Shown here: piece by piece, positions 5,296 to 28,480 of the stretch
How positions within the stretch are numbered: the stretch's first letter is position 1
How the letters are laid out: each line of letters starts with the position of its first letter
DNA from: Macrostomum lignano
Lineage: Eukaryota
Direction: 5' to 3'
Assembly (NCBI GenBank): GCA_002269645.1
Contig: NIVC01001135.1
Span: 1 to 64,000, forward strand
Length of the DNA: 64,000 nucleotides
Translations under genes and position numbers: made by a program
Notes under the pieces: model-generated
Database searches by the model: none
The model's input: the letters and a program-made list of their open reading frames with translations, nothing else
What the model was told of the DNA's origin: nothing

Positions 5296-8200
5296 TCAGT
5301 TACCGCCGCCTCCGGTGAACAGCGACACCAGCTTGTTTGGCTTCAGCCGCGACGTCAACGAAGACATCTTTCTGCGCACCGGAGAGGTTGCCGCGGCAGC
5401 CGTCGACTTTGCAGCCGATGCTGCGGCACCCGCCGCCGACTGTTGCTGCTTTGGTGCCTCCTGAAGTCGATTGGCAACCTCTTGAGCGCGCCTGGAATCA
5501 ATGCGTGCTTGGATTCAAGAACGGTGCAGTATGGAAGCCCTCAGTTCGATGACCTCAGTTTGATTTGACCCCAGATTAAAAGAGAAATACGCATTCGACC
5601 TTTGCGCTGAACTGCCAGTTGAAATCTGCAGCCTTCCAGTCTACGCAGCTGCATCAAGCCCTATTAGATATTTTATTGGGCAAATTGCAGCCGGCCCAAT
5701 GCGCAGCAGTTAAAAAAACAATGGCCTGCTGTCATTCTGGACCCACCCCCGGCTGCAACTCTTTCCTGTGCAGATCACTTCCGAAGTGGTACTGGATGAA
5801 TTGGAATTCCGGAATTACATGTTAAGCAGCCTGGGGCCGCCCCCCCCCCGTAAGCCATTTGGATTGTAAATAAAAACTTCAAAGGAAGTGCGCACGAGTG
5901 AATAGAGAATGCATTGCACTCAAAAGCTACATTTAGGTGCATAACAGCTTCTCAGAGATTTGATGTTACAGGGGAGGCCCGTAGCCTAGTGGTCTAGCGC
6001 AAGCCCAGGCTCGATTCCAAGTGCAGCCAAATTAATTTGGGGCTAAATTGGAATCTCGGCTTGGCTCTGCTCGTGCAATTAACGCCCTTGAGGGCCAACC
6101 TACCAAGGCCCAGTGAAGTGTACATGCCTAACGATAAATAAAGTTAAGGCCGCTGTACACTCTTGTGTGAGTGTGCCTGTGCGTCCCGGTACCCAGGCTA
6201 AGAAGCGCCCTAGAGTCAATTGTGTCGCCCCAGAGTCGTTTCAGAGTCGCTGCAGCTAACTCAGGTAAAATACGAAAGAAGCGACTCTAGACGACTCTAA
6301 ATAGACGAGATTTCACCGAGAAGTCGCCAAAAAGTCGTTAAAGAATCGTCCAAGAGTCAATTTTAAGCGTTCTATTGTCTGCGACTCTGAAATCACTCTG
6401 TGGCGACACAAGTAACTCTGGCACGACGATATGACGAGCTTGGGCCGTAGGGTTATATTTGAGGCGTGCTAGAGTCGCTGTAGTTAAGCGCCAACACGAC
6501 GACTCTTGGACGACTCTTTCGTGACTCTTACGACTCTACAACTCATGTGACGTGCTCGTGACGCAACAGTCGCATTAGGTGCGTTTGGGTCGTTAAAAAG
6601 TCCGAGAGTCGATCCAGAGTCCCTAGAGTCACTAGTCAGCTGTTTGCAACGACCTTTTAGTGATTCTTTGTCACGGTATCGTTTTCAATGGGCGTATGAC
6701 TGCGTACGTATCCGCACACTTGTGTGCCTCCTGCTCAGGGGAGTCGGTGGAATGGGCAATAATGGACACAGCCCTTCTGCCTCCAACAACAAATCGGATG
6801 TTGCAGAAACCTACCTGGTGAGATCTTCAACCTCCACCAGCATAGAGTCCTGCTCCATGTGCAGATCGTCCCGCTCAATTAGGCTTTTAACCAGGTCCTC
6901 GTTGTGCGCTGCGCGAATGGGTGAGAGGCGGGTTTGAAGCGTTTGTTTATTTAGTGAACCGATTTGTTTAAATTAGCTTGTTAGGTCTTAGTGGCCAAAA
7001 TCGCCGAAAGATAAAAGCGATAAAGGCTCTCGCTTTGTTTGTGCGTCCATCGTCTGGTTAAGCTAGCGATGTGACCGATGTCCTATTCTGGCCTAATTTT
7101 CTTTCGCTGAGAAAATGAATGCCAGCCACTAATGGATCATCTCTATAGAGTCGCTCCTATAGAGGCTCTCTGTCAGCCTCTGGAGCTGTCAGATGCAGCA
7201 AAGCAACGCTTTAAGCCTGGAGGCTGTGCTGGAGGTCCAAAAATTCGAGGCTAAGAGGCGAAAAGGGGGAGAGCGAACAGCGGAAAGACGCGCGCGCGAA
7301 GCCTCGCCTTCGCCTTTGGAGAGGCTCGCGGGCTTCAGGCGGGCGCAGATAATGGATGACGGCGGCGAGTGTTTTGGTCCCGAGGCCCGAGGGCTGCCCG
7401 GAATTCAAGACGGCTCGCCACGGGTCCCGTTGAAGGCCAAAATGGAGAGAAAACACACACGCAGCCGGGCAGACAGACAGCGCCAATGCTTCATTTTCTT
7501 CCCAACATATTTTTCCTTGCCCGGAAGAATTACCCGTATTTTCCCCCATTATAGTTCCCACTATACTGCTCCCATATTCGCCAAATAGAACTGTATACAC
7601 TTTTGTGCATTACTGCATCCTGGCAGACTGGGGGAAAGGCCGATGGAGGCTTCCCGTTTTCACTTTCTCTGCAGTGATTACCCGAACGCCCACGGACGCT
7701 TGCGCAGCTACTGGGCCTCCCAAATCTCTTCATGCTGCAGAATATCATGGCCAATTCCATATGCCAGTTCCACGGCGTGGGAAACAGGGGACCCCGATTC
7801 CTTCTGAGGTCGAACGGGACGGGACGGGACGAACTTTCGGGCCGAGGCGATGCAGGAGCAGCTGCTAAAAGTCGGACGTCATTATCTTCTGGGCCGCAGT
7901 CTCGACGATGCGGCGCGACCCTCTTCCCCCCCTGGAATTCTAGGAAATAGTGCAGCTCGCTAGCGGCCGCTTATATGGTCAGAATGAGGACTCTACACCA
8001 GCCCATCAGCGAAGCTTTATGATGGCCCAGTCGATCTTTACTGCCATTGCTGGCTGGCGCTTTTCGTTATATTTTTCCTAAGCTACCATCTATATAGTCA
8101 AAATAATAACGGATGATAATAAGCAATAGCAGGTGCGCTCGTTAAAACTGATGTGCAGGTGCTGTTTTACAGCCCAAAACAGGACGGGACAAGTCGCCGC

Positions 8201-11200
8201 AAGCTACCGATGGGAGGGGCCTAATGAGCTGTCCAAAATGGCGCTGAATAGCAATGTAGCCCGAATAGTTCCGGCTAATCTGCGAGGAAGAAACTAGGTG
8301 TGTATACACTCACTCTCAATGCGGCACAGCAGGTCATTGTGAATGACTTGCAGGGCCCCGAGGCTCAGCTGCTGCAGGTGGGCCCGGTGGAAACGGCGTG
8401 CTGCGGCTGGGCTGACGCCCATCAACTCGGCAACGAGATCGCGGCTGGCGCGGCTGCGCTGCTCGTGGCGTTCCACCTCCAGTTGCATGCGGGCCATTGG
8501 TCGGGCCTGGAGGTCGGTTGGTTGGTTTGTTAGGTTGCATATTGGAGCTTAGTGGGGTGGGTGTGCGGAGTGAGGTGGGTGTGTAGAGTGAGGTGGGCGT
8601 GTGGAGTGAGGTGGGTGTGCGGAGTGAGGTGGGCGTGTGGAATGAGGTGGGCGTGAGGAGTGAGGTGGGTGTGCGGAGTGAGGTGTGTGTGCGGAGTGAG
8701 GTGGTGAAGAGAAAGTGAGATGCAAGTCAAGAGTAGCGAATTGAACTTTCTACGATGGGACCCGGCTGTCTGGTACACCATAAATTAATCTTGGATTTTT
8801 AAGGACAGAAGAGAACGCACTTGTGCCAGGGCCAGCTGAGCTTCGGCCTGCAGTTGCGCCTGCCGAGTCAGCAGGCCATCGCTGGCTTCTGAGCAGCAGG
8901 TGCCGGCCGAAGCGGCGGCGCCAGCGGTAACAGCAGATGCGGAACCGGATGCAGAACCGGACAGGCTGCTGGTACTGCAGCAACTGGTAGCTGCGGCGGT
9001 AGATACGCCAGTAATTTGACTGTCCGATGCTCCCGATGGGTTCAGCGGCTGAAGCTGTCGGATTCAGACTTTGAGGCTTATCTAATGATCATAAAACTTC
9101 TAATAAAATCGTAAAAGACTTTCTAAGACTCGAGGAAGACTTTCTAAGAATAAAATATGATGACAGCATCCCACAAGGATGCGAGTTCTCCATCTCTCAC
9201 CTCGGATTTGTAGGCATCGCAGATTCCGGAGTCGGAGACCAGCGTAGAAGAATTGGCGCTGGCGGCTGTTGAATCATCGGTGTCGGCCGCGTCGTCTTGG
9301 CGGGCTCCGTCGGCAGTGGCGCAGTCGCCGTCCTCTTCGTCGCTGGTGAGATCGCTGATGAAGCAAAGCTGCATGGGAGCAGCAGCCTGATGAGGGATTT
9401 CAAAGTGAGTTGAGTTGTTAGCGTGGTTATTTAACCTCAAGTTCTGTTGTTAAACTTCCAGATTTTTTTCAACAATAATTAAAAAATTTAGGTTACCATG
9501 GCAACGAAAAAACTCGTTTTAACGATGCTTCCTCTTCCAGCAGGTTTGACTAATCTATGGGATAAGCCTATGCTTGTGATTACTCAACCCAGTTCTACTG
9601 CGAATGGTTTCTTCACCTGCGACACCTGTGCTCGCCGCCGTTTTTGCTGCGGCCTGAAGCTCTGCTCTCTGTCAATCGCTGCGCCATGATTTTCAACACC
9701 GTCCGGCCCGTCGGCCGGGCTGGCGGCCTCCTCCGAGCAGTCCGAGTCCGAGGCGGCGTCGTTGCGGAAGCACATCTCCATGCCGTTCGACTGCGCCGGT
9801 GCCAGCGCCAGGCCGGAGCCCGCCATGGTTGCCGTGGCCGATGATGACGCGGTGGTGGCCGTTGACGAGGACAGGCCGACGCAGCCGGGAACGCCGTTGC
9901 CAAAGCAACCGGCTACGGCCGCCGAAGTTGAAGCCAAGCCGCTGTCCACATCGTCATCTTCGACCGACATGCTCAGTGCCTGCAGCACGCGTTCCCGCTC
10001 CGAGAGGCCGGCAGTCTGGGTTATGGGGTGGGTTAAATGCTTTTGAATTCATTGTACAGACTTCTCTCTCCCTCTCTCCCACACTGTACACTGAATGTAC
10101 ATAAAGCAGTCAATCTGTCGTCCCCCTAGGCCCTTCTTTCCAAACCAACCCCCAATTTACACCCTGCCCCCTTGTTTCGCGTACATTGATGTACACAGCG
10201 TCTGCCATATTAAGCTTCTTGGGTCTAAGCTCTCGATCATCATCTTCTCTTTTGTCAATTTCATGCCATCGTTTTTGTGTGCGTCATGGTTAAAGTACAT
10301 GAACCAAACAGACTCTTTCTGACTTTTTTCGAATCGATTGAAATAAAATGTTAGAAAATTTTGGTCGATTTTATGTCAAGAATTCATGCAGTACCGTCAT
10401 TTCAATATTAAACTAGGATGGGAGATCTGCATCGTTGAAAATTACCACAGGACGAAAAGGCGTTGATGAAGCAAATGAAATTTACTTCGCAAAAAGCGAA
10501 AGAGCTGCGTAATTAACAGAGGAACGGAGGAGCCAAAATGAGCTTCAAGCAGACTACTTTTTCACGCCAGCTTGGCTTAGCTAGGCTTGACTTGACTTTT
10601 CACTCATTAGTGTTCCAGGCGGTCCCGATTCTCAGTTACTCTGCTTCTTTCCTTGAAGCTCAGTGAGGATTCAGGAAGACTTTTGCTGCTATTCTATTCT
10701 GCTGAAAAAACACACAAACTTCCAGAGCAAATAAAATGAGCCCTCGTGCTTGAATTAACTTGAGTTGAGAGATTTAAAGAGAAAAGGCAGACGAGGGAGA
10801 AGACTGGTAGCTCGTAGCGGCAGAGTGAGATGCGGCTGCTTCTCAGGACTTCTCCTAAGCTGAGTGAAGAGTTCTTAATTGCTGCTCCATCCGTCACGCC
10901 AGTTGGGTATAGCAAATGGCACTTCAACTTGACGATGGTAGCTTTGTTCAAGACAGCCGCTCGCTCCCGGTCCTCTCTCCTTCATCTTTATACACCAGCT
11001 CCCGTTCCTCGCCCGATTCCAGCGTCCGTGCTTCATCCTACTTCATCGCGACTCATAAAAATCGTCTTTACTGACGATCAATCGATCCTGACAGACGGAA
11101 CTTTGCATTCTGAGTAGTCAGAGGCTGTGACAGGAATTTTTTGTAGAGCCAAGTGCTACAGCAGGCGTCTAAGTCTTGGAATCGAACACACCCGGGTTCG

Positions 11201-14200
11201 ATTCCGCTCGATACGCGGAAACTGACCTGAGCCTTGTTAGAAGTACCGAGCTGGACGTTATCGTACGATTCACACTACCCATGAGGGCCAACCCCCGAGG
11301 CACAGAAAGTGTACATGACTGACGATTGGAAAGTCGTCGCAGTCGAAAGAATTGCCGCATCGCTGGTTGTGTGACCATGTCGCTGAAGGTGTTGCGCCAG
11401 GGTGCACCCTTTTGTGCAAATATCTGTTATACTTTTATGCCCCGGATCCTAACCTTACTTCAAGAATATTTGATATGAGACGCAAAAAGTTGTTTTCGAG
11501 AACGGCCGACAAGCAAACTTATAATTCCTTCGCTCAGCCGGGCAATTTTCGCATAATTTTTCTCTCCTCAAGAGCTCTGTAATTCTTGTCTCTTGTCTTT
11601 AAATTATACTCCTCGACGCACTTCAAAACGACAGTCGATCCGCAGCCAGAATAGAAGCAAGGGGTTTTGCCCATTCCGCCACCCCCGAGCATGCGGGTGC
11701 ACGCGGACGAGTACGCAGTCACGCACTCGCGCATACAGTAGGCACGCTTTGGGGGCTCTTCAATGCGGCTTGAGTTGCCCAGCCTAATGACCAGTAGGCA
11801 CGCTTTGGGGGCTCTGCAATGCGGCTTGAGTTGCCCAGCCTAATGACCAGTAGGCACGCTTTGGGGGCTCTTCAATGCGGCTTGAGTTGCCCAGCCTAAT
11901 GACCAGTAGGCACGCTTTGGGGGCTCTTCAATGCGGCTTGAGTTGCCCAGCCTAATGACCAGTAGGCACGCTTTGGGGGCTCTTCAATGCGGCTTGAGTT
12001 GCCCAGCGTAATGACCAGTAGGCACGCTTTGGGGGCTCTTCAATGCGGCTTGAGTTGCCCAGCGTAATGACCAGTAGGCACGCTTTGGGGGCTCTTCAAT
12101 GCGGCTTGAGTTGCCCAGCCTAATGACCAGTAGGCACGCTTTGGGGGCTCTGCAATGCGGCTTGAGTTGCCCAGCCTAATGACCAGTAGGCACGCTTTGG
12201 GGGCTCTTCAATGCGGCTTGAGTTGCCCAGCCTAATGACCAGTAGGCACGCTTTGGGGGCTCTTCAATGCGGCTTGAGTTGCCCAGCCTAATGACCAGTA
12301 GGCACGCTTTGGGGGCTCTTCAATGCGGCTTGAGTTGCCCAGCCTAATGACCAGTAGGCACGCTTTGGGGGCTCTTCAATGCGGCTTGAGTTGCCCAGCG
12401 TAATGACCAGTAGGCACGCTTTGGGGGCTCTTCAATGCGGCTTGAGTTGCCCAGCGTAATGACCAGTAGGCACGCTTTGGGGGCTCTTCAATGCGGCTTG
12501 AGTTGCCCAGCCTAATGACCAGTAGGCACGCTTTGGGGGCTCTTCAATGCGGCTTGAGTTGCCCAGCCTAATGACCAGTAGGCACGCTTTGGGGGCTCTT
12601 CAATGCGGCTTGAGTTGCCCAGCCTAATGACCAGTAGGCACGCTTTGGGGGCTCTGCAATGCGGCTTGAGTTGCCCAGCCTAATGACCAGTAGGCACGCT
12701 TTGGGGGCTCTTCAATGCGGCTTGAGTTGCCCAGCCTAATGACAGCCGATTTTGTAATCAACTTTCGTCAGCAATGTTTAATCAGAGCTCGTTCTCGAGT
12801 CGCTGTCGTCGCTGAGCAGACACCTGTCAACGCCGCGGCTTGGTTGGCCTACCTGGCTCTGCTCCGGCGCGTAGATCCATCGCACGCTGCTCAGTCCGAG
12901 CATGTCGGCCGGTCCGAGCCACAGCTCGCCAATGGCGGCCAAGAACCCGTAGCCGCTGTTGATGCCGCCTGCTCTGCGCGGGTCCAGCTGCATGGCAGGC
13001 AGCCCAGGCAGCGAGCGGACAGGCGGGCGGGCGGCCGGTCGGAGGGAAAGCTGGCCAAGCCGCGCGTCCTGCTGCTACTTTTCTGTCTGTAGCAGCGATC
13101 GGGGAGATTGGGAGGGGAGGAGCAGCTTTGCCGGCCGGGGATTCGGCGGGCGGGAGAAGAGAAAGAGCATGGGGATCATGGGTCGAGATTATTATTGGGG
13201 AGAAAGACGAGTTTGCAAACGAAACTGAATGAGGGGAGCGGAGCGGGTGAAGGCCGGTTGTTCCGGCCTAGAGAGAGAGGGAAGTTTATGCACGCTTGAT
13301 GGCGGCCGCGTCTGGGCCAGCCTTCGATGCTGATTAGGAAGTTTCGTCGGTTCCTTGGAACTTTTTAGGGAAGTGAAAAAATGGTTGAAACTTGTTGGGC
13401 TTATTGGGCATCCGTAGCTCAGTGTTCCACAAGAATTCAACAGAAATGAATGCGGAAGACGTGGAGTTCTTGGCCTGGAATCCGGAATGGAGAACTCTGG
13501 AGAGAGAAATCCAGACATTGGGCTTCACACTCCCAGATATTGCAAAGCAGAAAGGATACAAGATAAGTAGAAGAAGCAGCGCAGAAAGCGAAGCGGCTGC
13601 GGATTATGAATTGATAAACAGTTCCGGGCTCACTGGAACTTTTGGAGGGGCCAAAAAAAGCAGCGGCAGTCGAAAAATCGCAATGCAATTTTGTGTGCGC
13701 GAGGATCTGCGCTCCCAACCCTTGGTCGCTTCCTTCTCCGTCTCAGTGTTTTTTTGCCCCGTCGGCTGCAACGGGAACCAGGGCTGAGAAAAAGTTTCTA
13801 GGGAATGCCATCGCAGCTCGCCCCATAGTGGGAGAGACAGATCAAACCTCCTCTTCTATTGCAGCAATTCAGTCAACTGTACGAGCGCACAGAACTTCTC
13901 TTCCTTCTCCAGCTCCGTCGGTCCTTCGGGCGGACGAAAATATTCCCAGTTTCTTTTCGCAAGTTGGAAGATGCAACAGCGACTCAGACAGTCGGATCCC
14001 ATGGGGGGGGTCTATACTTTAGGGTTCAAGCACGGTCGGTAAGGCTTGAAGGAGAAGATTTACTAAGCTTCTCAGGCGGTTCAGAACCAATTGTGTTGAA
14101 AATTTTTCATTAATATTCTTTCCATAGTCGATTCAGTGCACCAAAAATAGCCGAGAAGTTATTGATTGCAAAATTTCTTTAAACAGAAATCTCCCTAAAA

Positions 14201-17200
14201 TAGTTGAAAACGCTTATCCCAGTTTGCACTACTGTAGGAATAAGCAACAGTAGTATCATAAGAAAATTGGTTTTAAAATGAGTATTAACCCCAGTTCCTC
14301 AGTCCCCACCAGGCCTGCTCTCCGCCGAACTCACCCTCCTCAGCGGCACAGCTGCCGACTCGCCATCGGCAGCAGCTCCAGCTGCCGCGGCAGTTAGCGA
14401 GCCGTGCCCGGCAGCGAAGAGACCCGCCAGCCGCTGCTGCCGCTGCTCGCGAGCCTCCGGCGCCGTCAGCATGGTCAGCGGCACCGGCACCAGGCTGTAG
14501 GTCTCGCCAGTCGTTTCTTCACCTTGTTCAGCATCTCCAGCCTCATCGCCCACGGTTCCGTCTTCATCATCCTCGTCGTCCTCATCCTCGGAGCCGGCGC
14601 AACCCAGCCGGTGCAGGTTGAACGGCAGGGCGCGGGCGTTGCGCCGCTTCAGCTCGGCGAACTCCTGCGCCAGACTGAGCAGGTTGGCCTTCCGCTCCTC
14701 CCGCCTGGCCTCCTCGGCCGCCTCCTGCGGGTCTTCCGGCTGAGAGGCACCGCCGCCGCCGTCACCGCGCAACGACGACGCCGGCTGTTGAGCTCGACGC
14801 TGCGGCGAGGAAGTCGTCGAGGACGTCGGCTGCAGCGTCCACGACGACGTCGGAGTCGGTGGCGACGCTGGGGGATGCAGCTTGGGCCGGAGCAGGGCGT
14901 CCTGGCTGGCCAGCTGCTCCTTCATCAGCTTGCCGACCTCGCCCATGAGCTCGGAGCAGTCAGACATGATGGAGAGCGAGTCAGCCTCTTTCAGCTGTTC
15001 CAGTCGGCGGCTGCGCAGCGGAGTTGCCGAGGCCGCCGTTGGAACGTCGCTGGCCGCAGCGCCGCCCAGGTTGTCCTCGGTGTTGGAGGCGGAGACGCGC
15101 ATCCAGTCGCTGAAGGAGTTGGAGTTGCGCATGATGTCGCTGCTGAAGCAGCTGCTGATGCTGGCGGTCATGTAGCCGGAAGTGGCCAGGGTTCGCTGGG
15201 CCACCTCCTCCTCGGCCGCCTCCTGATCGATCGGCCAGCAGCGACTGCTCGCGCCGATGCCGCCGCTGACACCCCGGTAGCCGCGGTACCGTCGCCAGGC
15301 TCGTTGAATTCTACGGTGAAAATAGTGAGCGATATATTCAGTTAAAATGCGAACTATGCTACTGAATTTATCGATTTATCAGTAGGCAACAGAGAATATT
15401 TATTAGTTCACATTTTTAACTACTATTGAAAAAATTGAAATAGCGGGCAAATTGAAGCAAATCTTTGCAAAATCCATTTAAGAGGAACCGAAATGTATTT
15501 TGAGCCTTGTGAGTGCGCCTTAGACAAAACACCGATATTTGCAAAATCGGAAATCCAGAAGATTAGAAATTGTGAATTTAGTGCTAAGAAACTGCAAGCT
15601 TCCTTTCTCGCAGGCGTCGCTTTGAGAGCAGCTCTGGAGCACCCTGAGACTGTCTTGAAAAAAAGTTAATTGCGCAACTTGCAAGCTGCAAGCCCACCGG
15701 GAAAGCGAAAGCTGTAGCTAGTAGAAGTTTCCAAGGAGAAAAGTTTCTCAATATTGTTCAACAGGCAGCGCATGATTGATAGGTCTCTGGGCCACTTTGG
15801 GTGCAGCTCGCTCCCAAACTCCCAGGAGGCTCGCGCACCAGTTTTCCTTCGCGTCAGGACTTTTTCCAGCGAAGAAGAATAAGTTTTCCCTGGGATGTGG
15901 CAGCCCGCAAACTCAGCTGTCTCAAGACTATGTTTGGGATTTTTTAATTGTCAACAAGAGAGGCTAGCGGCTCTGCGCATGTTTTTTGTGTGTACTTTTC
16001 GTGCTCCATCGGTGCTTCGGAATATTAATGAGTGTGTAGAGTCTGGCGGATTGCAGAAATTCTCCATTTCCTCGATTTCAGCTCATAACACATTTTGTTC
16101 AGTTCATCACGTTTTGGAGTTTGCACCGCACTAAAGACTGGATCGCGCAAGGCCGCTCGCAAAAAACCTTTTTGGGGCCTGTTTATCGGGATTGCCCAGT
16201 TCCTGTTGTTGGCTGCTCAGTTCCTGTTGTTGGCTGCTCAGTTCCTGTTGTTGACAGCCTAGTTCCTGTTGTTGGTTGCCTAGTTCCTGTTGTTGACAGC
16301 CTAGTTCCTGTTGTTGGTTGCCCAGTTCCTGTTGTTGGTTGCCCAGTTCCTGTTGTTGGTTGCCCAGTTCCTGTTGTTGACTGCCTAGTTCCTGTGGTTG
16401 GTTGCCTAGTTCCTGTTGTTGGTTGCCTAGTTCCTGTTGTTGGCCGCCTAGTACCTGTTGTTGGTTGCCTAGTTCCTGTTGTTGGCTGCTCAGTTCCTGT
16501 TGTTGACAGCCTAGTTCCTGTTGTTGGTTGCCTAGTTCCTGTTGTTGACTGCCTAGTTCCTGTTGTTGATTGCCCAGTTCCTGTTGTTGATTGCCCAGTT
16601 CCTGTTGTTGACTGCCTAGTTCCTGTTGTTGACTGCCTAGTTCCTGTTGTTGATTGCTCAGGTTCCTGTCGTTGGTTGCTCAGTTCCTGTTGTTGGTTGC
16701 TCAGTTCCTGTTGTTGGTTGCTCAGTTCCTGTTGTTGGTTGCTCAGTTCCTGTTGTTGGTTGCCTAGTTCCTGTTGTTGGCTGCTCAGTTCCTGTTTTTG
16801 ACAGCCTAGTTCCTGTTGTTGGTTGCCTAGTTCCTGTTGTTGATTGCCCAGTTCCTGTTGTTGATTGCCCAGTTCCTGTTGTTGATTGCCCAGTTCCTGT
16901 TTTTGGCTGCTCAGTTCCTGTGGTTGGCCGCCTAGTTCCTGTTGTTGGCCGCCTAGTTCCTGTTGTTGGTTGCCTAGTTCCTGTTGTTGGTTGCTCAGTT
17001 CCTGTTGTTGGTTGCTCAGTTCCTGTTGTTGGTTGCCTAGTTCCTGTTGTTGGTTGCTCAGTTCCTGTTGTTGGTTGCTCAGTTCCTGTTGTTGGTTGCC
17101 TAGTTCCTGTTGTTGGTTGCCTAGTTCCTGTTGTTGGCCACCTAGTACCTGTTGTTGGTTGCCTAGTTCCTGTTGTTGGCTGCTCAGTTCCTGTTGTTGA

Positions 17201-20200
17201 CAGCCTAGTTCCTGTTGTTGGTTGCCTAGTTCCTGTTGTTGACTGCCTAGTTCCTGTTGTTGATTGCCCAGTTCCTGTTGTTGACTGCCTAGTTCCTGTT
17301 GTTGACTGCCTAGTTCCTGTTGTTGACTGCCTAGTTCCTGTTGTTGATTGCTCAGGTTCCTGTCGTTGGTTGCTCAGTTCCTGTTTTTGACAGCCTAGTT
17401 CCTGTTGTTGGCCGCCTAGTTCCTGTTGTTGATTGCCCAGTTCCTGTTTTTGGCTGCTCAGTTCCTGTTGTTGGCCGCCTAGTTCCTGTTGTTGGCCGCC
17501 TAGTTCCTGTTGTTGGTTGCCTAGTTCCTGTTGTTGGTTGCTCAGTTCCTGTTGTTGGTTGCTCAGTTCCTGTTGTTGGTTGCCTAGTTCCTGTTGTTGG
17601 TTGCTCAGTTCCTGTTGTTGGTTGCTCAGTTCCTGTTGTTGGTTGCCTAGTTCCTGTTGTTGGTTGCCTAGTTCCTGTTGTTGGTTGCCTAGTTCCTGTT
17701 GTTGGTTGCCTAGTTCCTGTTGTTGGTTGCTCAGTTCCTGTTGTTGACAGCCTAGTTCCTGTTGTTGGCCGCCTAGTTCCTGTTGTTGGTTGCCTAGTTC
17801 CTGTTGCTGGCCGCCTAGTTCCTGTTGTTGGCCGCCTAGTTCCTGTTGTTGGTTGCCTAGTTCCTGTTGTTGACTGCCTAGTTCCTGTTGTTGATTGCCT
17901 AGTTCCTGTTGTTGATTGCCCAGTTCCTGTTGTTGACTGCCTAGTTCCTGTTGTTGACTGCCTAGTTCCTGTTGTTGGTTGCCTAGTTCCTGTTGTTGGT
18001 TGCTCAGTTCCTGTTGTTGGCCGCCTAGTTCCTGTTGTTGGCCGCCTAGTTCCTGTTGTTAGGCACCTGGTTCCTGTTGTTGTGCACCTAGTTCCTGTTG
18101 CTGGCCGCCTAGTTCCTGTTGTTGGCCGCCTATTTGTGTTTCAGCTCCATTTAGGACGGTGAAACTAGAACCCCAAACTCAGTTTTGAAGCGCCAACACT
18201 GTTTTATCAGCGCCACTAAATATCCCATCTGTTGAATATCTATAAATATCAGACCCGAGCAGCCAGGTTCAAATGGATACAGTTTGCATACTTGCAGCTT
18301 ACTTTCCTAATATAGTTAGGCATGGTGGGGGGGCTCTAATATCTGCGCAGCACAGCGCACAGCAACTGTTGCTATGCCGGGTCGGCCAGGTTAGACAGGC
18401 AGAAACAGGCACAAAAAAGGAACGAAAAAAGTCATAAGTGGACGCAATTGTCTCAGACTGAAGAGGAAGGAGGACAGGAGGCATTGGGGAGCAGAATGGA
18501 ATGGCCGCATTCCAAGCCTGGGGTGGGGGGGTGGGAGATGAGGCTCTGTTCTGTACACTTCGCTTCGATTTCGAAGCTGTTTCACCGAGCGGCAAACGGC
18601 GGGAAAGTGCACTGCCGCAGTTGTTGCTAGGGCGAAGAAATTCGCGACAGGCACCTCGCGCGGCTCCCAATTCCAAACTGGGATGCTGGCCGGCTGTGTA
18701 GTCAAATTCCTTCCTGCGGCCTCATTCGGCACTCTTTTTAAATCCCCTTTGACTTTTCTTCACCTCTTCGAGTGTTTTCTTTTCGCTAAAAAAGAAAACT
18801 AAAATTTTCTGCTGAACTGCAAATATCCGTAAGCGGTTGACTGACAGGCAGTTTTGCTTTGAACTTCTTTGGAACAAATAGAAATCCTACTGACCTGACT
18901 TGCCTGAACAGTAGAGTGTCTACCCAAAACAGCATCGGTAGAGTGTCTACCCAAAACAGCATCGGTAGAGTGTCTACCCAAAACAGCATCGGTAGAGTGT
19001 CTACCCAAATCAGCATTGGTAGAGTGTCTACCCAAATCAGCATTGGTAGAGTGTCTACCCAAATCAGCATTGGTAGAGTGTCTACCCAAATCAGCATTGG
19101 TAGAGTGTCTACCCAAATCAGCATTGGTAGAGTGTCTACCCAAAACAGCATCGGTAGAGTGTCTACCCAAAACAGCATCGGTAGAGTGTCTACCCAAATC
19201 AGCATTGGTAGAGTGTCTACCCAAATCAGCATTGGTAGAGTGTCTACCCAAAACAGCATCGGTAGAGTGTCTACCCAAAACAGCATCGGTAGAGTGTCTA
19301 CCCAAATCAGCATTGGTAGAGTGTCTACCCAAATCAGCATTGGTAGAGTGTCTACCCAAATCAGCATTGGTAGAGCAGTGTCTACCCAAAACAGTATTGG
19401 TAGAGTAGTGTCTACCCAAATCAGCATTGGTAGAGTGTCTACCAGTACCCAAATCAGCATTGGTAGAGTGTCTACCAGTACCCAAATCAGCATTGGTAGA
19501 GTGTCTACCAGTACCCAAATCAGCATTGGTAGAGTGTCTACCCAAATCAGCATTGGTAGAGTGTCTACCCAAATCAGCATTGGTAGAGTGTCTACCCAAA
19601 TCAGCATCGATAGAGTGTCTTCCCAAATCAGCATCGATAGAGTGTCTACCCAAATCAGCATTGGTAGAGTGTCTACCCAAATCAGCATTGGTAGAGTGTC
19701 TACCCAAATCAGCATTGGTAGAGTGTCTACCCAAATCAGCATTGGTAGAGTGTCTACCCAAATCAGCATTGGTAGAGTGTCTACCCAAATCAGCATTGGT
19801 AGAGTGTCTACCCAAATCAGCATTGGTAGAGTGTCTACCCAAATCAGCATTGGTAGAGTGTCTACCCAAATCAGCATTGGTAGAGTGTCTACCCAAATCA
19901 GCATTGGTAGAGTGTCTACCCAAATCAGCATTGGTAGAGTGTCTACCCAAATCAGCATTGGTAGAGTGTCTACCCAAATCAGCATTGGTAGAGTGTCTAC
20001 CCAAATCAGCATTGGTAGAGTGTCTACCCAAATCAGCATTGGTAGAGTGTCTACCAAAATCAGCAGTCGATGGTATCCCATACCTTTTGTTTATTCAGCA
20101 AGCCCAATATTTCCCTCTTCAAGCATCCCCGTTTTCAATATCTGCCCATCAATCTGTTGGAACGCAATCGGACTCTCTAATTAGTGTTGGTTGGCAAAAC

Positions 20201-20507
20201 AGGATTAGGGAAAAGCTTTAACGGCTTGTTTGCACAGGTGGGCAATTCGATCCGGTTGGAGTGGCACCAATTTGCTGTTTGCCGGGGCCGGCAGCGGTTT
20301 TATGCCTTTTAGTGGCGCATTAGCGCGGGGGCTGTGCTTGGGGCTTACAGAAAGGCGGCCGTGTCCGAATCCATCTCCACGGTGAGGGGGTCGTTAACGC
20401 CGAATTCCTGGAAAAGGGATATCCTGTTTTCGCCTCTGCCGCTGCCGCCGCCGCTGCCGCTGCCGCCGCCGCTGCCGCTGATGTAGTCAAGACTGGCTGC
20501 AGAATCC
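5296..20507 (-). CDS. SCHIP1: SCHIP1 (schwannomin-interacting protein 1) homolog with an N-terminal IQ motif (IQCJ-SCHIP1-like), multi-exon, at least about 810 aa
   Basis: Phase-consistent GT-AG exons: 20349-20507, 14335-15310, 9617-10015, 9201-9386, 8821-9054 (acceptor may be 9048), 8314-8506, 6815-6908, 5296-5491. Spliced product contains LLTRQAQLQAEAQLALAQARPMARMQLEVE and [45 protein letters not shown], which match the SCHIP1 C-terminal coiled coil as I recall it ([24 protein letters not shown] / [45 protein letters not shown]). The five 3' exons are firm; linkage of the IQ exons rests on splice-phase compatibility. Confidence 0.85.
5971..6793 (+). mobile_element. tRNA-headed SINE copy 1, split by a MITE-like insertion
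   Basis: A-box-like GTAGCCTAGTGG and B-box-like GGCTCGATTCC. Body nearly identical to 34578-35171. A-rich tail AACAACAAA. Decayed TSD GATGTT(A/G)CA. Confidence 0.75.
6190..6696 (+). mobile_element. Non-autonomous element (ACCC...GGG ends, GAGTCG/CGACTC-rich) inserted in SINE copy 1
   Basis: Interrupts the SINE relative to the 34.6-kb copy. Homologous in reverse complement to 48261-48656 (shared TACCCAGGC.AAGAAGCG, ATTGTCTGCGACTCT and CGTTTTCAA.GGG). Confidence 0.6.
8552..8705. repeat. 18-bp minisatellite (GTGGGTGTGCGGAGTGAG), about 8 copies, intronic
   Basis: Direct tandem repeats visible. Confidence 0.9.
9492..9505. promoter_or_regulatory. Canonical RFX X-box GTTACCATGGCAAC inside SCHIP1 intron 9387-9616
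   Basis: Near-palindromic 14-mer matching the X-box consensus; 118 bp upstream of an in-frame ATG at 9374 (MQLCFISD). Confidence 0.6.
11143..11420 (+). mobile_element. Diverged tRNA-headed SINE (copy 3 or a related subfamily)
   Basis: B-box GGGTTCGATTCC near 11195. Shares GAGGGCCAACC...AAGTGTACATG and CCATGTCGCT...GCCAGGGTGCAC blocks with the 34.6-kb copy. Confidence 0.6.
11736..12743. repeat. 56-bp minisatellite, 18 copies
   Basis: Unit CAGTAGGCACGCTTTGGGGGCTCTTCAATGCGGCTTGAGTTGCCCAGCCTAATGAC; period 11736 to 11792; nearly invariant. Confidence 0.97.
12853..12993 (-). CDS. Possible alternative first coding exon of SCHIP1 (MQLDPRR...YAPEQSQ)
   Basis: ATG at 12993, 47 codons, donor CAG|GTAGGC in phase 0, compatible with the phase-0 acceptor at 10015. 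No homology support. Confidence 0.35.
16191..18132. repeat. 21-bp minisatellite (AGTTCCTGTTGTTGGTTGCCT), about 92 copies
   Basis: Tandem units; source of the spurious VPVVGCL and PSSCCW ORFs. Confidence 0.97.
18911..20066. repeat. 27-bp minisatellite (GTAGAGTGTCTACCCAAATCAGCATTG), about 42 copies
   Basis: Tandem units with occasional 3- or 6-bp insertion variants. Confidence 0.97.
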
Positions 20508-20562: not shown

Positions 20563-21423
<861 letters not shown>

Positions 21424-23284: not shown

Positions 23285-24160
23285 CACACCTGACAACCAA
23301 TCAAAATCACAAGCTGTGGCACACCTGACAACCAATCAAAATCACAAGCTGTGGCACACCTGACAACCAATCAAAATCACAAGCTGTGGCACACCTGACA
23401 ACCAATCAAAATCACACACTGTGGCTCACCTGACAACCAATCAAAATCACAAGCTGTGGCTCACCTGACAACCAATCAAAATCACAAGCTGTGGCACACC
23501 TGACAACCAATCAAAATCACAAGCTGTGGCTCACCTGACAACCAATCAAAATCACAAGCTGTGGCTCACCTGACAACCAATCAAAATCACAAGCTGTGGC
23601 ACACCTGACAATAAATCAACATCACAAGCTGTGGCACACCTGACAACCAATCAAAATCACAAGCTGTGGCTCACCTGACAACCGATCAAAATCACAAGCT
23701 GTGGCTCACCTGACAACCAATCAAAATCACACACTGTGGCACACCTGACAACCAATCAACATCACAAGCTGTGGCTCACCTGACAATCAATCAACATCAC
23801 AAGCTGTGGCTCACCTGACAACCAATCAAAATCACACACTGTGGCACACCTGACAACCAATCAAAATCACACACTGTGGCTCACCTGACAACCAATCAAA
23901 ATCACAAGCTGTGGCACACCTGACAACCAATCAAAATCACACACTGTGGCACACCTGACAACCAATCAAAATCACAAGCTGTGGCTCACCTGACAACCAA
24001 TCAAAATCACACACTGTGCAGTGGCTCACCTGACAACCAATCAAAATCACAAGCTGTGGCTCACCTGACAACCAATCAAAATCACACACTGTGGCTCACC
24101 TGACAACCAATCAAAATCACACACTGTGGCACACCTGACAACCAATCAAAATCACACGGT
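23285..24160. repeat. 35-bp minisatellite (CACCTGACAACCAATCAAAATCACAAGCTGTGGCT), about 25 copies
   Basis: Period 23287 to 23322. Confidence 0.97.
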
Positions 24161-25408: not shown

Positions 25409-26157
25409 GGGTGATGGCAGGGTGATGGAAGGGGGCAGGGTGATGGAAGGGGGCATGGTGATGGAAGGGGGCAGGGTGATGGAAGGGGGCAGGGTGATGG
25501 AAGGGGGCATGGTGATGGAAGGGGGCATGGTGATGGAAGGGGGCAGGGTGATGGAAGGGGGCAGGGTGATGGAAGGGGGCAGGGTGATGGAAGGGGGCAT
25601 GGTGATGGAAGGGGGCATGGTGATGGAAGGGGGCAGGGTGATGGAAGGGGGCATGGTGATGGAAGGGGGCAGGGTGATGGAAGGGGGCAGGGTGATGGAA
25701 GGGGGGCAGGGTGATGGAAGGGGGCATGGTGATGGAAGGGGGGCAGGGTGATGGAAGGGGGCAGGGTGATGGAAGGGGGCAGGGTGATGGAAGGGGGCAG
25801 GGTGATGGAAGGGGGCAGGGTGATGGAAGGGGGCAGGGTGGTGGAAGGGGGCATGGTGATGGAAGGGGGCAGGGTGATGGAAGGGGGCATGGTGATGGAA
25901 GGGGGCAGGGTGATGGAAGGGGGCAGGGTGATGGAAGGGGGCAGGGTGGTGGAAGGGGGCATGGTGATGGAAGGGGGCAGGGTGATGGAAGGGGGCATGG
26001 TGATGGAAGGGGGCATGGTGATGGAAGGGGGCAGGGTGATGGAAGGGGGCAGGGTGATGGAAGGGGGCAGGGTGATGGAAGGGGCAGGGTGATGGAAGGG
26101 GGCAGGGTGATGGAAGGGGGCATGGTGATGGAAGGGGCAGGGTGATGGAAGGGGCAG
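25409..26157. repeat. 18-bp G-rich minisatellite (GGGTGATGGAAGGGGGCA), about 41 copies
   Basis: Tandem units. Confidence 0.96.
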
Positions 26158-28480
26158 GCGCACTACAGCAGCAGAGTCAGCTAAGGTTCTCAGAGCAGCT
26201 ATTGCATAAGTCATTCATCCATTGCTGTAGCCATGGAGACGGGCAGTGCCAGTGTTTCTTTAGAACAAAGTGAAGAGGATTTGCTAGCGGATTTTATTCT
26301 CTCTTTTTGTTCCTCGGTTTTTTCTCCCGCAAAGCCTGGCAGAAAAGATAAGGGCGGGATAGACTGGGGAGATGTCCGAGGGTGGTCCATTGCTGGCCGA
26401 AACCGCAAGCTTTTGTCGCGGCCGTTTTCTGCCGCAGTGGAATTATAAAAATTGCATTCTTTTCTGCCGAAAATGTTCCCGGATTAGCTACGCTTGGAGA
26501 TTTACGAGGATTAGCTGCGATAGGCCGTGCCACTAGATACTGTTGGGCTCGGAGTGGACTATAGAAAGATAGCAAAGCTCTCGACATATTGAATCGATTT
26601 TTCATTTCCATACCAGATTTCAAGTCTGTATTGTCCAGAGCAGAGTACAGTGTCAAGTGCTGAGCACTGCAGGTCAGCTTAAACATGACGCTTAGATATG
26701 AGGATGGCATAGCAATTAGCAAACTGGCTGACTTTTTTGACAGACACGGCAAACTCATCAAAATATCACGCCAATTGCTGGCAAAAGTACCGAGTAGACA
26801 CGACGCTGCACTTACCCGACTCAGCGATGGATTCCGAAGTCGGTCAGTCTCCAACTGCGCGCAGACTAGTGTTAATAATGAATGCTATCCCAGGTTGGGC
26901 TCAGCTGCTCTCTGGCAGGCAGACGGGCACAACAAGATGCGGGCCTGCAGGACAGACACACTTTTATAAGCCTCGAACAGAAAACTGCAGATGGTTTGGG
27001 AAGGAAAAATTCTTTCGAGGCTCGGTCGCGACGCAAATTTATGGGGATCTCGATGCTATGGAAGCGAAAGGGCGCAATGTTATAGTCGGGATGGGAAGGG
27101 CCAGGTTTATAAGCGAATGAGAGGGCCTTTGGCTTGCATCCCGGCTGCTTTGCACACTTTATAGTCATGCAGAGCAAGCGGCTGGTATTTGTACGCTGGG
27201 GAGACGTCAGGGGGAGAGGATGAAGGGGAGAGAGCGGCTGCTGGCTGATTCACAATTCGCCCCTCGCAATACCATAGCCCTCCGTCCGCTCCGCTCTTTC
27301 TCTCTCTCTCTCTCGCCGTCCGCTCCCATAGCAAAGCCTGTCCTGTCCCCATTCACATCCCTTTCTTCCCGATCCGCTACAACCAAGGGAGAATCATCTA
27401 TGTCAATCGGGGGGGAGGGGCGCTCAGGGCGAGATGGAGGGGCGATTGGGGAAAGCCACAACCAATCGCCTCTCAACACACAACAGCAGCGCAATGATCC
27501 TTTACTGCTCCAGCTCCGTTACTCGCATGCTCGGGTCCCCTGCTCGTGGCAGCCACCCCCCGCACCGATGTCAGAGCCATGGTCTTCTCAGGTCATGGGT
27601 GTTTTTGGTATCGCTACCTCTAGGGAAAAATCCGGTAGCGATAGGAATGCGTAATTCTGCCTCTCCGGTGTTGAGAATGCGAGCACTTTATCTGTGAATG
27701 CCCCGCCTTTACTCAGGACAGACTCACCTACCTCGGCCCAACCCGGACCTCTCCGAGGTTTTCAGGCCCAAGAACCCCTGCTAGCTCGTCCGCTACCTAA
27801 GGGCTACCGGGTGAGCGACCATCCACCTCCTGGACTCTCCGGAGGGGCACCGGATCTCCCTGAGCGACACCACAGCACCAGCTGCCCGCGGTCGCCAGGG
27901 GTTGACGGAATGGATGGCGACGCCCCTCTGCTGTGTATCCGGATGCCCGGCTGCCACCAATCTGTGTGTGTGTGTGTGGGGGGGAATAAAATCCCAGCTC
28001 ATGAAGGAGTGAGAAAGCAGAGAGCCCCAGAGCTTTCCTGGCATCGCGTGATAAATTACTGCCTCCAACCCCAGCCAAGTGGTGGGTGACGGCGAATGAT
28101 TAACTGGCATTTCATCTGGCAGCGCCGCCTCTGCCTTCTTCTCAATCTCTCTGCTTTTTTATGTGCTCCGTTTGATTTCTCTCTCCCTCTCTCGCCCTCC
28201 ATTATAGATTCTTAAGCGGTCCTTCTTTCCACTATGCCGCCTTGGCACAGCCAGACGGCTGTCTCCACTGAATCTACTCGCTTGCTCACTGCAAGTCGGA
28301 TAGAAAACCGATTATCCGAAATCATTCTTTTCTGGGAAATTCCGTCTTAGCGGCTTTGGACTCTGGCGGCAAAACTGACAGTGGATAAATAGGAAGCAGA
28401 TTGCATGATTTACTGCCAAGTGTGATAACAGGGGGTGGGAGTGTTTGAAACTGGGGTTTTTGGCTACGTTTGTTAAGCCT

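What the first reader, a model, noticed from the sequence alone, without database searches (positions are those of the whole stretch)
14335..20507. Invertebrate SCHIP1 carries an IQCJ-like IQ motif split by an intron: the IQCJ-SCHIP1 'fusion' may be ancestral
Seen: the exon at 20349-20507 ends ...MDSDTAAF-CT|GTAAGC and the exon starting at 15310 begins A-ATT-CAA-CGA-GCC-TGG. Splicing gives DTAAFLIQRAWRRYRGYR, a calmodulin-binding IQ motif that is invisible in the ORF track. That large exon ends AGG|GTGAGT in phase 0, matching the phase-0 acceptor of the SCHIP1 exon at 10015. Established: vertebrate IQCJ-SCHIP1 is described as a read-through of two adjacent genes, and human IQCJ contains IIQRAWREY (from memory). 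Inference: an IQ+SCHIP1 polypeptide in a probable flatworm suggests the combined architecture predates vertebrates, with later fission or alternative promoters.
Basis: partly seen in the sequence, partly recalled or inferred. Interest (0 to 1): 0.78.

Follow-up and report, generated by a model that had tools for sequence, protein, structure and literature searches.

The report
Flatworm IQCJ-SCHIP1 gene with split IQ
The window holds the Macrostomum lignano (flatworm) copy of the scaffold gene IQCJ-SCHIP1: its calmodulin-type IQ motif really is split by an intron and joined to SCHIP1 in one protein, as in many other invertebrates, so the human 'read-through fusion' is an old single gene, but this protein and its relatives are already in public databases.

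Summary
On the minus strand, exon 20374-20349 (…MDSDTAAF-CT|gtaagc) joins exon 15310-14335 (tag|A-ATT-CAA…) to give MDSDTAAFLIQRAWRRYRGYR. That exon ends in phase 0 and joins 10015.

My eight-exon, 767-aa model differs by one residue from GenBank PAA57421.1 (Macrostomum lignano BOX15_Mlig007663g3), which comes from an RNA-seq-based annotation. An alternative first exon (12993-12853) gives an IQ-less 480-aa isoform identical to PAA46232.1.

The interpretation also holds. Single polypeptides with 'IQRAWR' plus SCHIP-1_C occur in brachiopod, nemertean, annelid, mollusc, echinoderm, hemichordate and amphioxus; a horseshoe crab carries the variant 'IQRGWH'. RefSeq already names some of them 'IQCJ-SCHIP1 readthrough transcript protein-like'.

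The intron sits in the same place (phase 2, in the codon before the Ile of IQ) in flatworm, leech, nemertean and starfish. Most non-vertebrates have two IQ motifs flanking a short coiled coil; the flatworm keeps only the second, IQCJ-type one and does not match Pfam PF15157.

The result is real and ancestral, but largely already in databases, and one paper (PMC6101605) already suggests the human locus is a single gene. Interest is modest.

The parts
20349..20374 (-). Coding exon 1: ATG GAT TCG GAC ACG GCC GCC TTT CT| (MDSDTAAF + 2 bases of Leu9), donor gtaagc. The open frame and a candidate acceptor extend up to 20507 (5' UTR, upstream exon or trans-splice site; undecided).
   Evidence: The start matches PAA57421.1 and paralog P0010, which begins MDANTAAV.
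15311..20348 (-). Intron 1 (5,038 bp), phase 2, lying in the codon just before the Ile of the IQ motif. It is filled with minisatellites: a 21-bp unit x92 at 16192-18132 and a 27-bp unit x42 at 18911-20065.
   Evidence: The same position and phase occur in paralog L001, Helobdella, Tubulanus and Asterias.
14335..15310 (-). Coding exon 2 (976 bp). It encodes the third base of Leu9, then IQRAWRRYRGYR, the TSGYMTASISS motif, SIMSDCSELMG and NLLSLAQEFAELKRRNARALPFNLH. It ends AGG|gtgagt in phase 0.
   Evidence: A local HMM of the equivalent invertebrate region scores 40.9 bits against at most 6.7 bits for 500 shuffles.
12853..12993 (-). Alternative first coding exon (MQLDPRRAGG...APEQSQ, donor CAG|gtaggc), lying in the 4.3-kb intron 2. 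Spliced to 10015 it gives the IQ-less 480-aa isoform.
   Evidence: The product is 480/480 identical to PAA46232.1/PAA71799.1 (P0279).
9617..10015 (-). Coding exon 3 (TAGLSERERVLQAL ... GMEMCFRNDAASDSDCSEE ...), phase 0 at both ends.
9201..9386 (-). Coding exon 4 (AAAPMQLCFISDLTSDEEDGD...), carrying a second copy of the MxxCF + acidic Ser/Asp/Glu motif.
8821..9054 (-). Coding exon 5 (Ser/Ala-rich, ending LLTRQAQLQAEAQLALAQ); start of the SCHIP-1_C match.
8314..8506 (-). Coding exon 6 (ARPMARMQLEVERH...[13 protein letters not shown]), part of SCHIP-1_C; ends in phase 1.
6815..6908 (-). Coding exon 7 ([30 protein letters not shown]), the most conserved part of SCHIP-1_C. Donor CAG|gtaggt, not the in-frame TAG.
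5296..5491 (-). Last coding exon (RAQEVANRLQ...KLVSLFTGGGGN) with stop TGA at 5298-5296.

Best explanation
Window 5296-20374 (minus strand) is the Macrostomum lignano ortholog of the bilaterian IQCJ-SCHIP1 gene. It is one gene with two alternative first coding exons. The distal start (exons 1+2) yields a 767-aa protein. That protein opens with an IQ-like helix (LIQRAWRRYRGYR) interrupted at the DNA level by an ancient phase-2 intron. Next comes a long, mostly disordered acidic/Ser-rich region with conserved short motifs (NLLSLAQEFAELK, MxxCFxxD-acidic clusters), then the C-terminal SCHIP-1_C coiled-coil domain. The proximal start (12993) yields a 480-aa protein without the IQ.

By analogy with vertebrate IQCJ-SCHIP1 (inferred, not tested here), three things are expected. 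The IQ-like motif should recruit calmodulin. The acidic Ser clusters look like CK2-type sites that could control partner binding. The C-terminal coiled coil should mediate self-association and docking to cortical-cytoskeleton partners of the ankyrin/spectrin/FERM type. Promoter choice would then decide whether the scaffold is calmodulin-coupled.

The IQ+SCHIP1 arrangement is ancestral to Bilateria. The ancestor probably carried IQ1, a short coiled coil and IQ2. The flatworm and the leech retain only IQ2, which is the motif found in vertebrate IQCJ.
For: Shown:
- The junctions and phases are exact.
- The model equals PAA57421.1 apart from one residue, and the short isoform equals PAA46232.1 exactly. 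The GenBank annotation of NIVC01 was built from RNA-seq (StringTie/TACO plus a de novo transcriptome, ORFs by TransDecoder; PMC5730564).
- SCHIP-1_C scores 134.9 bits against a cut-off of 23.5.
- Paralog P0010 (PAA81594.1) starts MDANTAAVRIQQAWRGWQNR and has the same split codon, AG|G ATT CAG.
- A phmmer search of 1.84 billion representatives gave 206 family members. IQ-bearing ones come from Lingula, Tubulanus, Branchiostoma, Helobdella, Haliotis, Patella, Saccoglossus, Anneissia, Asterias, Tachypleus and vertebrates.
- The phase-2 intron lies in the codon before the Ile of IQ in Helobdella (AG|G ATC CAA), Tubulanus (AC|G ATT CAA) and Asterias (AC|G ATC CAA). In the last two species it is the second IQ (ITIQRAWR) that is split; IQ1 lies inside an exon.
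- An HMM of the invertebrate IQ2-to-LSLAQEFAEL region hits the flatworm N-terminus collinearly at 40.9 bits, against a maximum of 6.7 bits for 500 shuffles.

From the literature:
Against: - The flatworm protein does not match Pfam PF15157 (IQCJ-SCHIP1 N-terminal) even at E<=10, and its IQ scores only 11.6 bits on PF00612, below the 20.3 cut-off. The human IQCJ IQ is also sub-threshold, at 13.6 bits.
- The residues before the motif (TAA-x-x-IQ), and the canonical IQxxxRGxxxR pattern of paralog P0010, resemble IQ1 of other phyla, so the assignment to IQ2 rests mainly on intron position and collinearity.
- At the collinear locus of the Mlig_3_7 assembly (L003) the deposited model omits exons 1-2.
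- I did not see reads. Transcript support is second-hand, through the GenBank annotation.
- Calmodulin binding and every downstream function are inferred from vertebrates.
Confidence: 0.88

Rival explanations
1. The 767-aa ORF comes from a precursor or read-through transcript. On this view exons 1-2 form a separate small IQ gene, and the mature SCHIP1 mRNA starts at the internal exon (12993) or at a spliced-leader acceptor, as in M. lignano polycistronic transcriptional units.
For: About 7% of assembled M. lignano transcripts are multi-gene precursors (PMC5730564). An IQ-less isoform with its own ATG exists. The model at the collinear locus L003 lacks exons 1-2.
Against: Exon 2 has no stop codon. 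It ends in phase 0 at a consensus donor, AGG|gtgagt, that matches the phase-0 acceptor at 10015. The annotation pipeline cuts transcriptional units at trans-splice sites and still deposited the 767-aa gene. The region homologous to exon 2 is contiguous with SCHIP-1_C in proteins of many other phyla.
Confidence: 0.06
2. The flatworm IQ is orthologous to the first, canonical IQ motif (IQ1: AAxxIQxxFRGxxxRKxY) of other bilaterians and not to the IQCJ-type IQ2, so it is not 'IQCJ-like' in the strict sense.
For: 'DTAAFLIQ' and 'NTAAVRIQ' share the (T/A)AA-x-x-IQ prefix of IQ1. P0010 fits IQxxxRGxxxR. The motif lies at the extreme N-terminus.
Against: In Tubulanus and Asterias IQ1 is not interrupted by an intron, whereas IQ2 is split in exactly the flatworm position and phase and opens the large exon that continues into the LSLAQEFAEL region, as in the flatworm. 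The IQRAWR core is identical to IQ2 and to human IQCJ.
Confidence: 0.08
3. The IQ motif arose independently in flatworms (convergence or lineage-specific exon gain) and says nothing about the vertebrate fusion.
For: There is no PF15157 hit. IQ motifs are short and arise easily. Paralog P0002 has no IQ[RQK]AW[RK] within its 31-kb locus. Insect representatives show no IQ.
Against: Five gene structures from four phyla share the same intron position and phase. The hexapeptide IQRAWR is identical from flatworm to human. Downstream motifs are collinear.
Confidence: 0.02

Closest known systems
Human IQCJ-SCHIP1 readthrough transcript protein (NP_001184042.1 / UniProt B3KU38, 563 aa)
   Same: It has an N-terminal IQ-like motif with the identical core IQRAWR, a long acidic/Ser-rich linker and a C-terminal SCHIP-1_C domain. 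IQ-less isoforms arise from internal first exons (by literature for human; for the flatworm). The IQ scores below Pfam's IQ cut-off in both proteins (13.6 and 11.6 bits).
   Different: The human protein has about 50 residues (coiled-coil remnant [21 protein letters not shown]...) before the IQ and matches PF15157 at 155 bits. The flatworm has 8 residues before the IQ and no PF15157 match. The flatworm has two MxxCF-acidic motifs. The human locus also produces a stand-alone IQCJ product; no such terminal exon was seen in the window.
Invertebrate RefSeq proteins with IQ1, coiled coil, IQ2 and SCHIP-1_C (e.g. Tubulanus XP_074657986.1, Lingula XP_013392216.1, Haliotis XP_071086652.1 and Branchiostoma XP_066266423.1 'IQCJ-SCHIP1 readthrough transcript protein-like', Asterias XP_071798389.1)
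   Same: The order is the same: IQ2, then Ser/acidic region, then LSLAQEFAEL, then MxxCF-acidic, then SCHIP-1_C. The phase-2 intron before IQ2 is the same, and so is the large exon beginning at IQ2.
   Different: These proteins carry an additional canonical IQ1 and the coiled coil QVEEGELLVENHKLEV upstream. No such exons are detectable within 43 kb upstream in the window.
Helobdella robusta XP_009019680.1 (566 aa)
   Same: It has a single IQ (VLRIQQAWRRYRESQ) with the same split codon (AG|G ATC CAA) plus SCHIP-1_C, and no PF15157 hit. It is the closest architecture to the flatworm protein.
   Different: It has a 64-residue unrelated N-terminal extension. The sequence outside the motifs is highly diverged.
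Macrostomum lignano paralogs PAA81594.1 (P0010, 381 aa) and PAA63315.1 (P0002, 548 aa)
   Same: They belong to the same family. P0010 has the same MD-x-x-TAA-x-x-IQ start and the same intron.
   Different: P0010 is much shorter and lacks the LSLAQEFAEL region. P0002 has the TLATSGYMT motif but no IQ in its locus.

Membership tests
SCHIP1 family (Pfam PF10148 SCHIP-1_C) | C-terminal SCHIP-1_C coiled-coil domain scoring above the gathering threshold | tested here: met
   134.9 bits (E=5.5e-39) against a cut-off of 23.5, residues 525-712 of the 767-aa protein.
IQCJ-SCHIP1 long isoform (Pfam PF15157 'Fusion protein IQCJ-SCHIP1 with IQ-like motif') | Match to the PF15157 profile (coiled-coil remnant + IQ2 + downstream, 99 positions) | tested here: not met
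   No hit at E<=10 for P0280 or P0010. Hits were obtained for Tubulanus (45.6 bits), Branchiostoma (45.0), Asterias (30.2) and human (155.3), with a cut-off of 28. The flatworm lacks the part of the profile upstream of the IQ.
IQCJ-SCHIP1 long isoform | IQ-like motif with core IQRAWR N-terminal to SCHIP-1_C in the same polypeptide | tested here: met
   LIQRAWRRYRGYR at residues 9-21 of the spliced product, identical to GenBank PAA57421.1. The core is identical to human, amphioxus, nemertean and starfish.
IQCJ-SCHIP1 long isoform | Phase-2 intron in the codon immediately before the Ile of the IQ2 motif | tested here: met
   Window CT|A ATT CAA; paralog AG|G ATT CAG; Helobdella AG|G ATC CAA; Tubulanus AC|G ATT CAA; Asterias AC|G ATC CAA. 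Vertebrates could not be tested because no vertebrate genomic DNA was obtainable.
IQCJ-SCHIP1 long isoform | Collinear conserved motifs between the IQ and SCHIP-1_C (…SDxSE…, LSLAQEFAEL) | tested here: met
   A local HMM built from ten non-vertebrate proteins scores 40.9 bits on flatworm residues 1-335 (IQ at 9-20, LSLAQEFAEL block at 202-245). The maximum for 500 shuffles was 6.7 bits.
Ancestral bilaterian two-IQ architecture (IQ1, coiled coil, IQ2) | Canonical IQ1 (IQxxFRGxxxR) and the QVEEGELLVENHKLEV coiled coil upstream of IQ2 | tested here: not met
   tblastn with nine pre-IQ2 segments and a six-frame regex found nothing on either strand of the window. The deposited CDS starts 8 residues before the IQ.
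Canonical IQ calmodulin-binding motif (Pfam PF00612) | Score above the gathering threshold / consensus IQxxxRGxxxR | tested here: not met
   11.6 bits against 20.3; the motif has Arg instead of Gly at position 7. Human IQCJ scores 13.6 bits and P0010 15.2 bits. All are 'IQ-like'.
Canonical IQ calmodulin-binding motif | Physical binding of (apo-)calmodulin | not testable with these tools
   Known only for vertebrate IQCJ-SCHIP1, from the literature (title cited in PMC5343793).

The most novel reading that the evidence does not exclude
IQCJ and SCHIP1 were never two genes. The bilaterian ancestor had one gene encoding IQ1, a short coiled coil, IQ2, a disordered acidic linker and SCHIP-1_C, already with nested alternative starts giving two-IQ, one-IQ and IQ-less isoforms. 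Vertebrate 'IQCJ' is simply the 5' part of that gene after it acquired its own terminal exon: its Met1 (MRLEE...) aligns with the internal Met of the coiled-coil exon (MRLEK / MRMQR / MRQEK in invertebrates). The official 'readthrough' label would therefore be backwards, and calmodulin coupling of this cortical scaffold would predate myelin, nodes of Ranvier and vertebrate axon initial segments.
Probability: 0.6. Interest if true: 0.45.

Novelty: new member of a known kind. Interest (0 to 1): 0.33.

Why it matters
It corrects a nomenclature-driven view. HGNC and NCBI, and studies of transcription-derived gene fusions such as PMC6764479, treat IQCJ-SCHIP1 as a read-through of two genes. The comparative gene structures here show one ancient gene with a conserved intron inside the IQ motif.

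For the SCHIP1 field, it points to a calmodulin-regulated long isoform and an IQ-less short isoform as an old regulatory pair. M. lignano is a transgenesis-capable flatworm, so the pair could be studied there.

For annotation, it shows that short N-terminal motif exons are dropped in some deposited models (P0001, and the collinear locus L003).

The gain is modest, for three reasons. The 767-aa protein is already in GenBank and UniProt. RefSeq already labels invertebrate orthologs 'IQCJ-SCHIP1 ... -like'. And a single-gene status for the human locus has been suggested in print (PMC6101605).

Tried and rejected
- **N-terminal word-index search:** a search with the 378-aa N-terminal model found nothing. 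It was probably swamped by low-complexity words (GSGGG, EDEDD, AAAA), because relatives sharing clear motifs turned up later. It is not evidence of absence.
- **C-terminal profile search:** it returned 444 hits, but the 120 listed were all fragments of 219 aa or fewer, useless for an N-terminal survey.
- **Exon-fragment alignments:** MAFFT alignments of exon fragments to P0010 were badly misaligned and were abandoned. P0010 alone was used instead.
- **A transient confusion:** an apparent 99% copy of exon 2 'upstream of paralog P0002' was an artefact of two loci stored in one file. The copy belongs to L003, the collinear locus of P0001.
- **Gene-structure look-ups that gave no usable DNA:** Lingula X2, Haliotis X2, Asterias X3 and Anneissia X1 were not on record (only the longest isoform is); Branchiostoma gave a 2-kb stub; Tachypleus was too long at over 100 kb. 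As a result Mollusca, Brachiopoda, Cephalochordata, Ecdysozoa and vertebrates were not tested for the intron.
- **Papers not held:** Martin 2008 and Martin 2017 were not in the library.
- **ORFs at 13-3567:** Pfam found nothing.


Full report
**1. Observation**

The gene lies on the minus strand. The sequence reads ...GAG ATG GAT TCG GAC ACG GCC GCC TTT CT|GTAAGC, with the exon ending at 20349. The next exon begins ...caccgtag|A ATT CAA CGA GCC TGG CGA CGG TAC CGC GGC TAC CGG at 15310.

Joining them gives MDSDTAAF-L-IQRAWRRYRGYR, with the Leu codon split CT|A (a phase-2 intron of 5,038 bp). The 976-bp exon ends CTG AGG AGG|GTGAGT at 14335 in phase 0. The next acceptor, acccag|ACT GCC at 10015, is also phase 0.

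The mechanical ORF list misses the motif, because its ORF in this exon begins only at 15204. Only the 5' end it gave for the first exon (20507) remains unverified. A candidate acceptor is there and the frame stays open, but the coding sequence most likely starts at the ATG at 20374.

**2. Gene model and identity**

Following consensus splice sites and frame, I assembled eight coding exons: 20374-20349, 15310-14335, 10015-9617, 9386-9201, 9054-8821, 8506-8314, 6908-6815 and 5491-5299, with a TGA stop. All have GT..AG borders and compatible phases.

The 767-aa product has a strong SCHIP-1_C domain: PF10148 at 134.9 bits against a cut-off of 23.5.

A protein search with the C-terminal half identified the organism as the flatworm Macrostomum lignano, through P0001 (BOX15_Mlig007663g2) at 99% identity. 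The 90% cluster of that hit contains PAA57421.1 (BOX15_Mlig007663g3, UniProt A0A267E772), 767 aa. It differs from my model at one residue, A247S.

The GenBank annotation of assembly NIVC01 was derived from RNA-seq: StringTie/TACO transcripts merged with a de novo transcriptome, boundaries set from trans-splicing and poly(A) reads, and ORFs called by TransDecoder (PMC5730564).

**3. A second promoter**

The partial model P0001 uses a different first exon. I located it in the window at 13035-12853, inside the 4.3-kb intron between exons 2 and 3. It has an ATG at 12993 and a donor AGC CAG|gtaggc.

Spliced to 10015, it yields a 480-aa protein identical over 480/480 residues to PAA46232.1/PAA71799.1. 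The locus thus makes an IQ-bearing long isoform and an IQ-less short isoform from nested starts. This is the arrangement described for vertebrate IQCJ-SCHIP1 versus SCHIP1.

**4. Paralogs**

M. lignano paralog PAA81594.1 (P0010, 381 aa) begins MDANTAAVRIQQAWRGWQNR and ends in SCHIP-1_C. In its locus the first exon ends ...GCT GTG AG|gtgagc and the second begins G ATT CAG CAG GCC TGG. This is the same phase-2 intron in the codon before the Ile. A third paralog (P0002) shares the TLATSGYMT motif but has no IQ[RQK]AW[RK] anywhere in its 31-kb locus.

**5. Other phyla**

A phmmer search with P0010 against 1.84 billion representatives returned 206 family members. Scanning the retrieved sequences for IQ motifs and naming the hits showed single polypeptides with IQ plus SCHIP-1_C in these taxa:

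| Taxon | Group |
|---|---|
| Lingula anatina | Brachiopoda |
| Tubulanus polymorphus | Nemertea |
| Helobdella robusta | Annelida |
| Haliotis spp., Patella spp. | Mollusca |
| Tachypleus tridentatus | Chelicerata |
| Asterias spp., Anneissia japonica | Echinodermata |
| Saccoglossus kowalevskii | Hemichordata |
| Branchiostoma lanceolatum | Cephalochordata |
| vertebrates | Vertebrata |

RefSeq already calls the abalone and amphioxus proteins 'IQCJ-SCHIP1 readthrough transcript protein-like'.

Most non-vertebrate long isoforms carry two IQ motifs:

- a canonical IQ1 (AAxxIQxxFRGxxxRKxY);
- a short coiled coil (QVEEGELLVENHKLEV);
- then RRNRSRxY..ITIQRAWR (IQ2).

Human IQCJ ([39 protein letters not shown]...KIIQRAWREY) aligns with the coiled coil plus IQ2. 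Its Met1 corresponds to the internal Met of the coiled-coil exon, seen as the MRMQR / MRMKK / MRQEK starts of Saccoglossus, Anneissia and Haliotis isoforms.

Pfam PF15157 ('Fusion protein IQCJ-SCHIP1 with IQ-like motif') matches Tubulanus, Branchiostoma and Asterias above threshold. Insect representatives showed no IQ, which suggests loss in that lineage.

**6. The intron is ancient and identifies the motif**

I obtained genomic DNA for three further species.

- Helobdella...GTG CTA AG|gttaag ... ttcag|G ATC CAA CAA GCC TGG.
- Tubulanus...ATC ATT AC|gtgagt ... ttgtag|G ATT CAA AGA GCT TGG.
- Asterias amurensis...GTA ATC AC|gtaagt ... ccatag|G ATC CAA CGA GCC TGG.

In all three the intron is phase 2 in the codon preceding the Ile of IQ, exactly as in both flatworm genes. 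In Tubulanus and Asterias the split motif is IQ2, and it opens a large exon, as in the flatworm; IQ1 lies within an exon.

A profile built from the IQ2-to-LSLAQEFAEL region of ten non-vertebrate proteins hits the flatworm N-terminus collinearly at 40.9 bits (IQ at residues 9-20, NLLSLAQEFAELKRRNARALPFNLH at 202-245). The maximum for 500 shuffles was 6.7 bits.

The flatworm IQ is therefore the ortholog of the IQCJ-type IQ2. The residual resemblance of its 'TAA' prefix to IQ1 is kept as a minor rival. No IQ1 or coiled-coil exon is detectable anywhere else in the window, so the flatworm, like the leech, has a reduced N-terminus. This explains why it fails PF15157.

**7. How it most likely works**

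Shown here: the architecture, meaning an IQ-like helix, a long low-complexity acidic/Ser-rich linker, two MxxCF-acidic clusters (MEMCFRNDAASDSDCSEE and MQLCFISDLTSDEEDGD), a C-terminal coiled-coil domain, and two alternative starts.

Inferred from vertebrate work:

- The IQ-like motif binds calmodulin (Kwasnicka-Crawford 2006, title cited).
- The C-terminus self-associates and binds ankyrin, and this binding depends on CK2 phosphorylation.
- In Drosophila, Schip1 links Expanded to Tao-1 (PMC5882220).

The flatworm long isoform is thus best read as a calmodulin-coupled cortical scaffold and the short isoform as its calmodulin-independent counterpart. None of this was tested here. The IQ scores below Pfam's IQ threshold in flatworm and human alike (11.6 and 13.6 bits).

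**8. Novelty**

The protein is deposited, as a 'hypothetical protein' in GenBank and as a 'SCHIP-1 C-terminal domain-containing protein' in UniProt. Invertebrate orthologs are machine-named after IQCJ-SCHIP1. Abascal et al. [quoted passage not shown]

Other work still treats it as a transcription-derived fusion (PMC6764479). In the searchable library I found no paper describing three things: the invertebrate two-IQ architecture, the conserved intron in the IQ motif, or the flatworm isoform pair.

The finding is correct and its inference is well supported. It is an incremental, database-visible result rather than a discovery of a new kind.

**9. Limits**

- Transcript support is indirect, through the annotation.
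- Vertebrate, mollusc, brachiopod, amphioxus and arthropod introns could not be examined.
- Non-bilaterians were not surveyed by name.
- The 5' boundary of exon 1 and possible spliced-leader usage are unknown.

Noticed in passing
window 16192-18132, 18911-20065, 20573-21423, 11736-12743, 8551-8704, 23287-24156, 25416-26158: The introns and flanks of the gene are packed with long, very regular micro- and minisatellite arrays: 21 bp x92, 27 bp x42, (CTAT)x213, 56 bp x18, 18 bp x8.6, 35 bp x25 and 18 bp x41. They generate many long spurious ORFs of up to 478 aa in all frames of the mechanical ORF list.
   Followed up: partly
window 9695-9790 and 9320-9386 (minus strand): The motif 'M-x-x-C-F-x-x-D + acidic Ser/Asp/Glu cluster' occurs twice, in consecutive exons (MEMCFRNDAASDSDCSEE and MQLCFISDLTSDEEDGD), and also twice in paralog P0002. 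The other phyla examined show it once (LQICFMND...). This looks like a Macrostomum-lineage duplication of the putative CK2/partner-binding segment.
   Followed up: partly
window 13-504 (+) and 2133-2543 (-), plus ORFs 2504-3034 and 3043-3567 (-): Two ORFs in inverted orientation encode similar hydrophobic, multi-pass-membrane-like sequences (…SLYSSV(R/K)VILNMI(N/T)F(N/S)LDS…TETFQRCISDFDVAFDLLRLL…). They appear to be an inverted partial duplication of the neighbouring gene. No Pfam family matched at E<=0.01.
   Followed up: partly
L003 (GenBank NIVC01001291.1) 7716-8689 versus window 15309-14335: The Mlig_3_7 contig that is collinear with the window (94-98% identity over about 21 kb) contains an intact copy of the IQ exon. 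The deposited gene there (PAA69799.1, 'partial') starts at the internal exon and leaves the IQ exons unannotated. The window is a second, near-identical copy, consistent with the known duplicated genome of this species.
   Followed up: yes
P0187 (human) versus P0193, P0194, P0263, P0133: Human IQCJ Met1 ([21 protein letters not shown]..ENHQL) aligns with an internal Met of the invertebrate coiled-coil exon (EEAMRLEKTMQQVDEGELLVGNHQL). Several invertebrate RefSeq isoforms start at that same Met (MRMQR.., MRMKK.., MRQEK..). An IQ1-less start therefore seems to be shared between vertebrates and invertebrates.
   Followed up: partly
L002 (GenBank NIVC01001856.1), locus of paralog P0002: This paralog keeps the TLATSGYMT/SSCF motif that follows the IQ in the window gene. 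It has no IQ[RQK]AW[RK] in any frame of the 31-kb locus, and its annotated first exon is unrelated. This suggests loss or replacement of the IQ exon in one of the three flatworm paralog groups.
   Followed up: partly
P0138, P0145, P0196, P0221, P0236: Long SCHIP-1_C proteins of about 860-1180 aa, of which only P0138 was named (the beetle Hypothenemus hampei), share a different conserved N-terminal motif (RGI(V/I)NPNYPGFQHLAHTL) and show no IQ. The horseshoe crab keeps IQ1 and a degenerate IQ2 (RIQRGWHSF). The IQ module may have been lost within arthropods.
   Followed up: no
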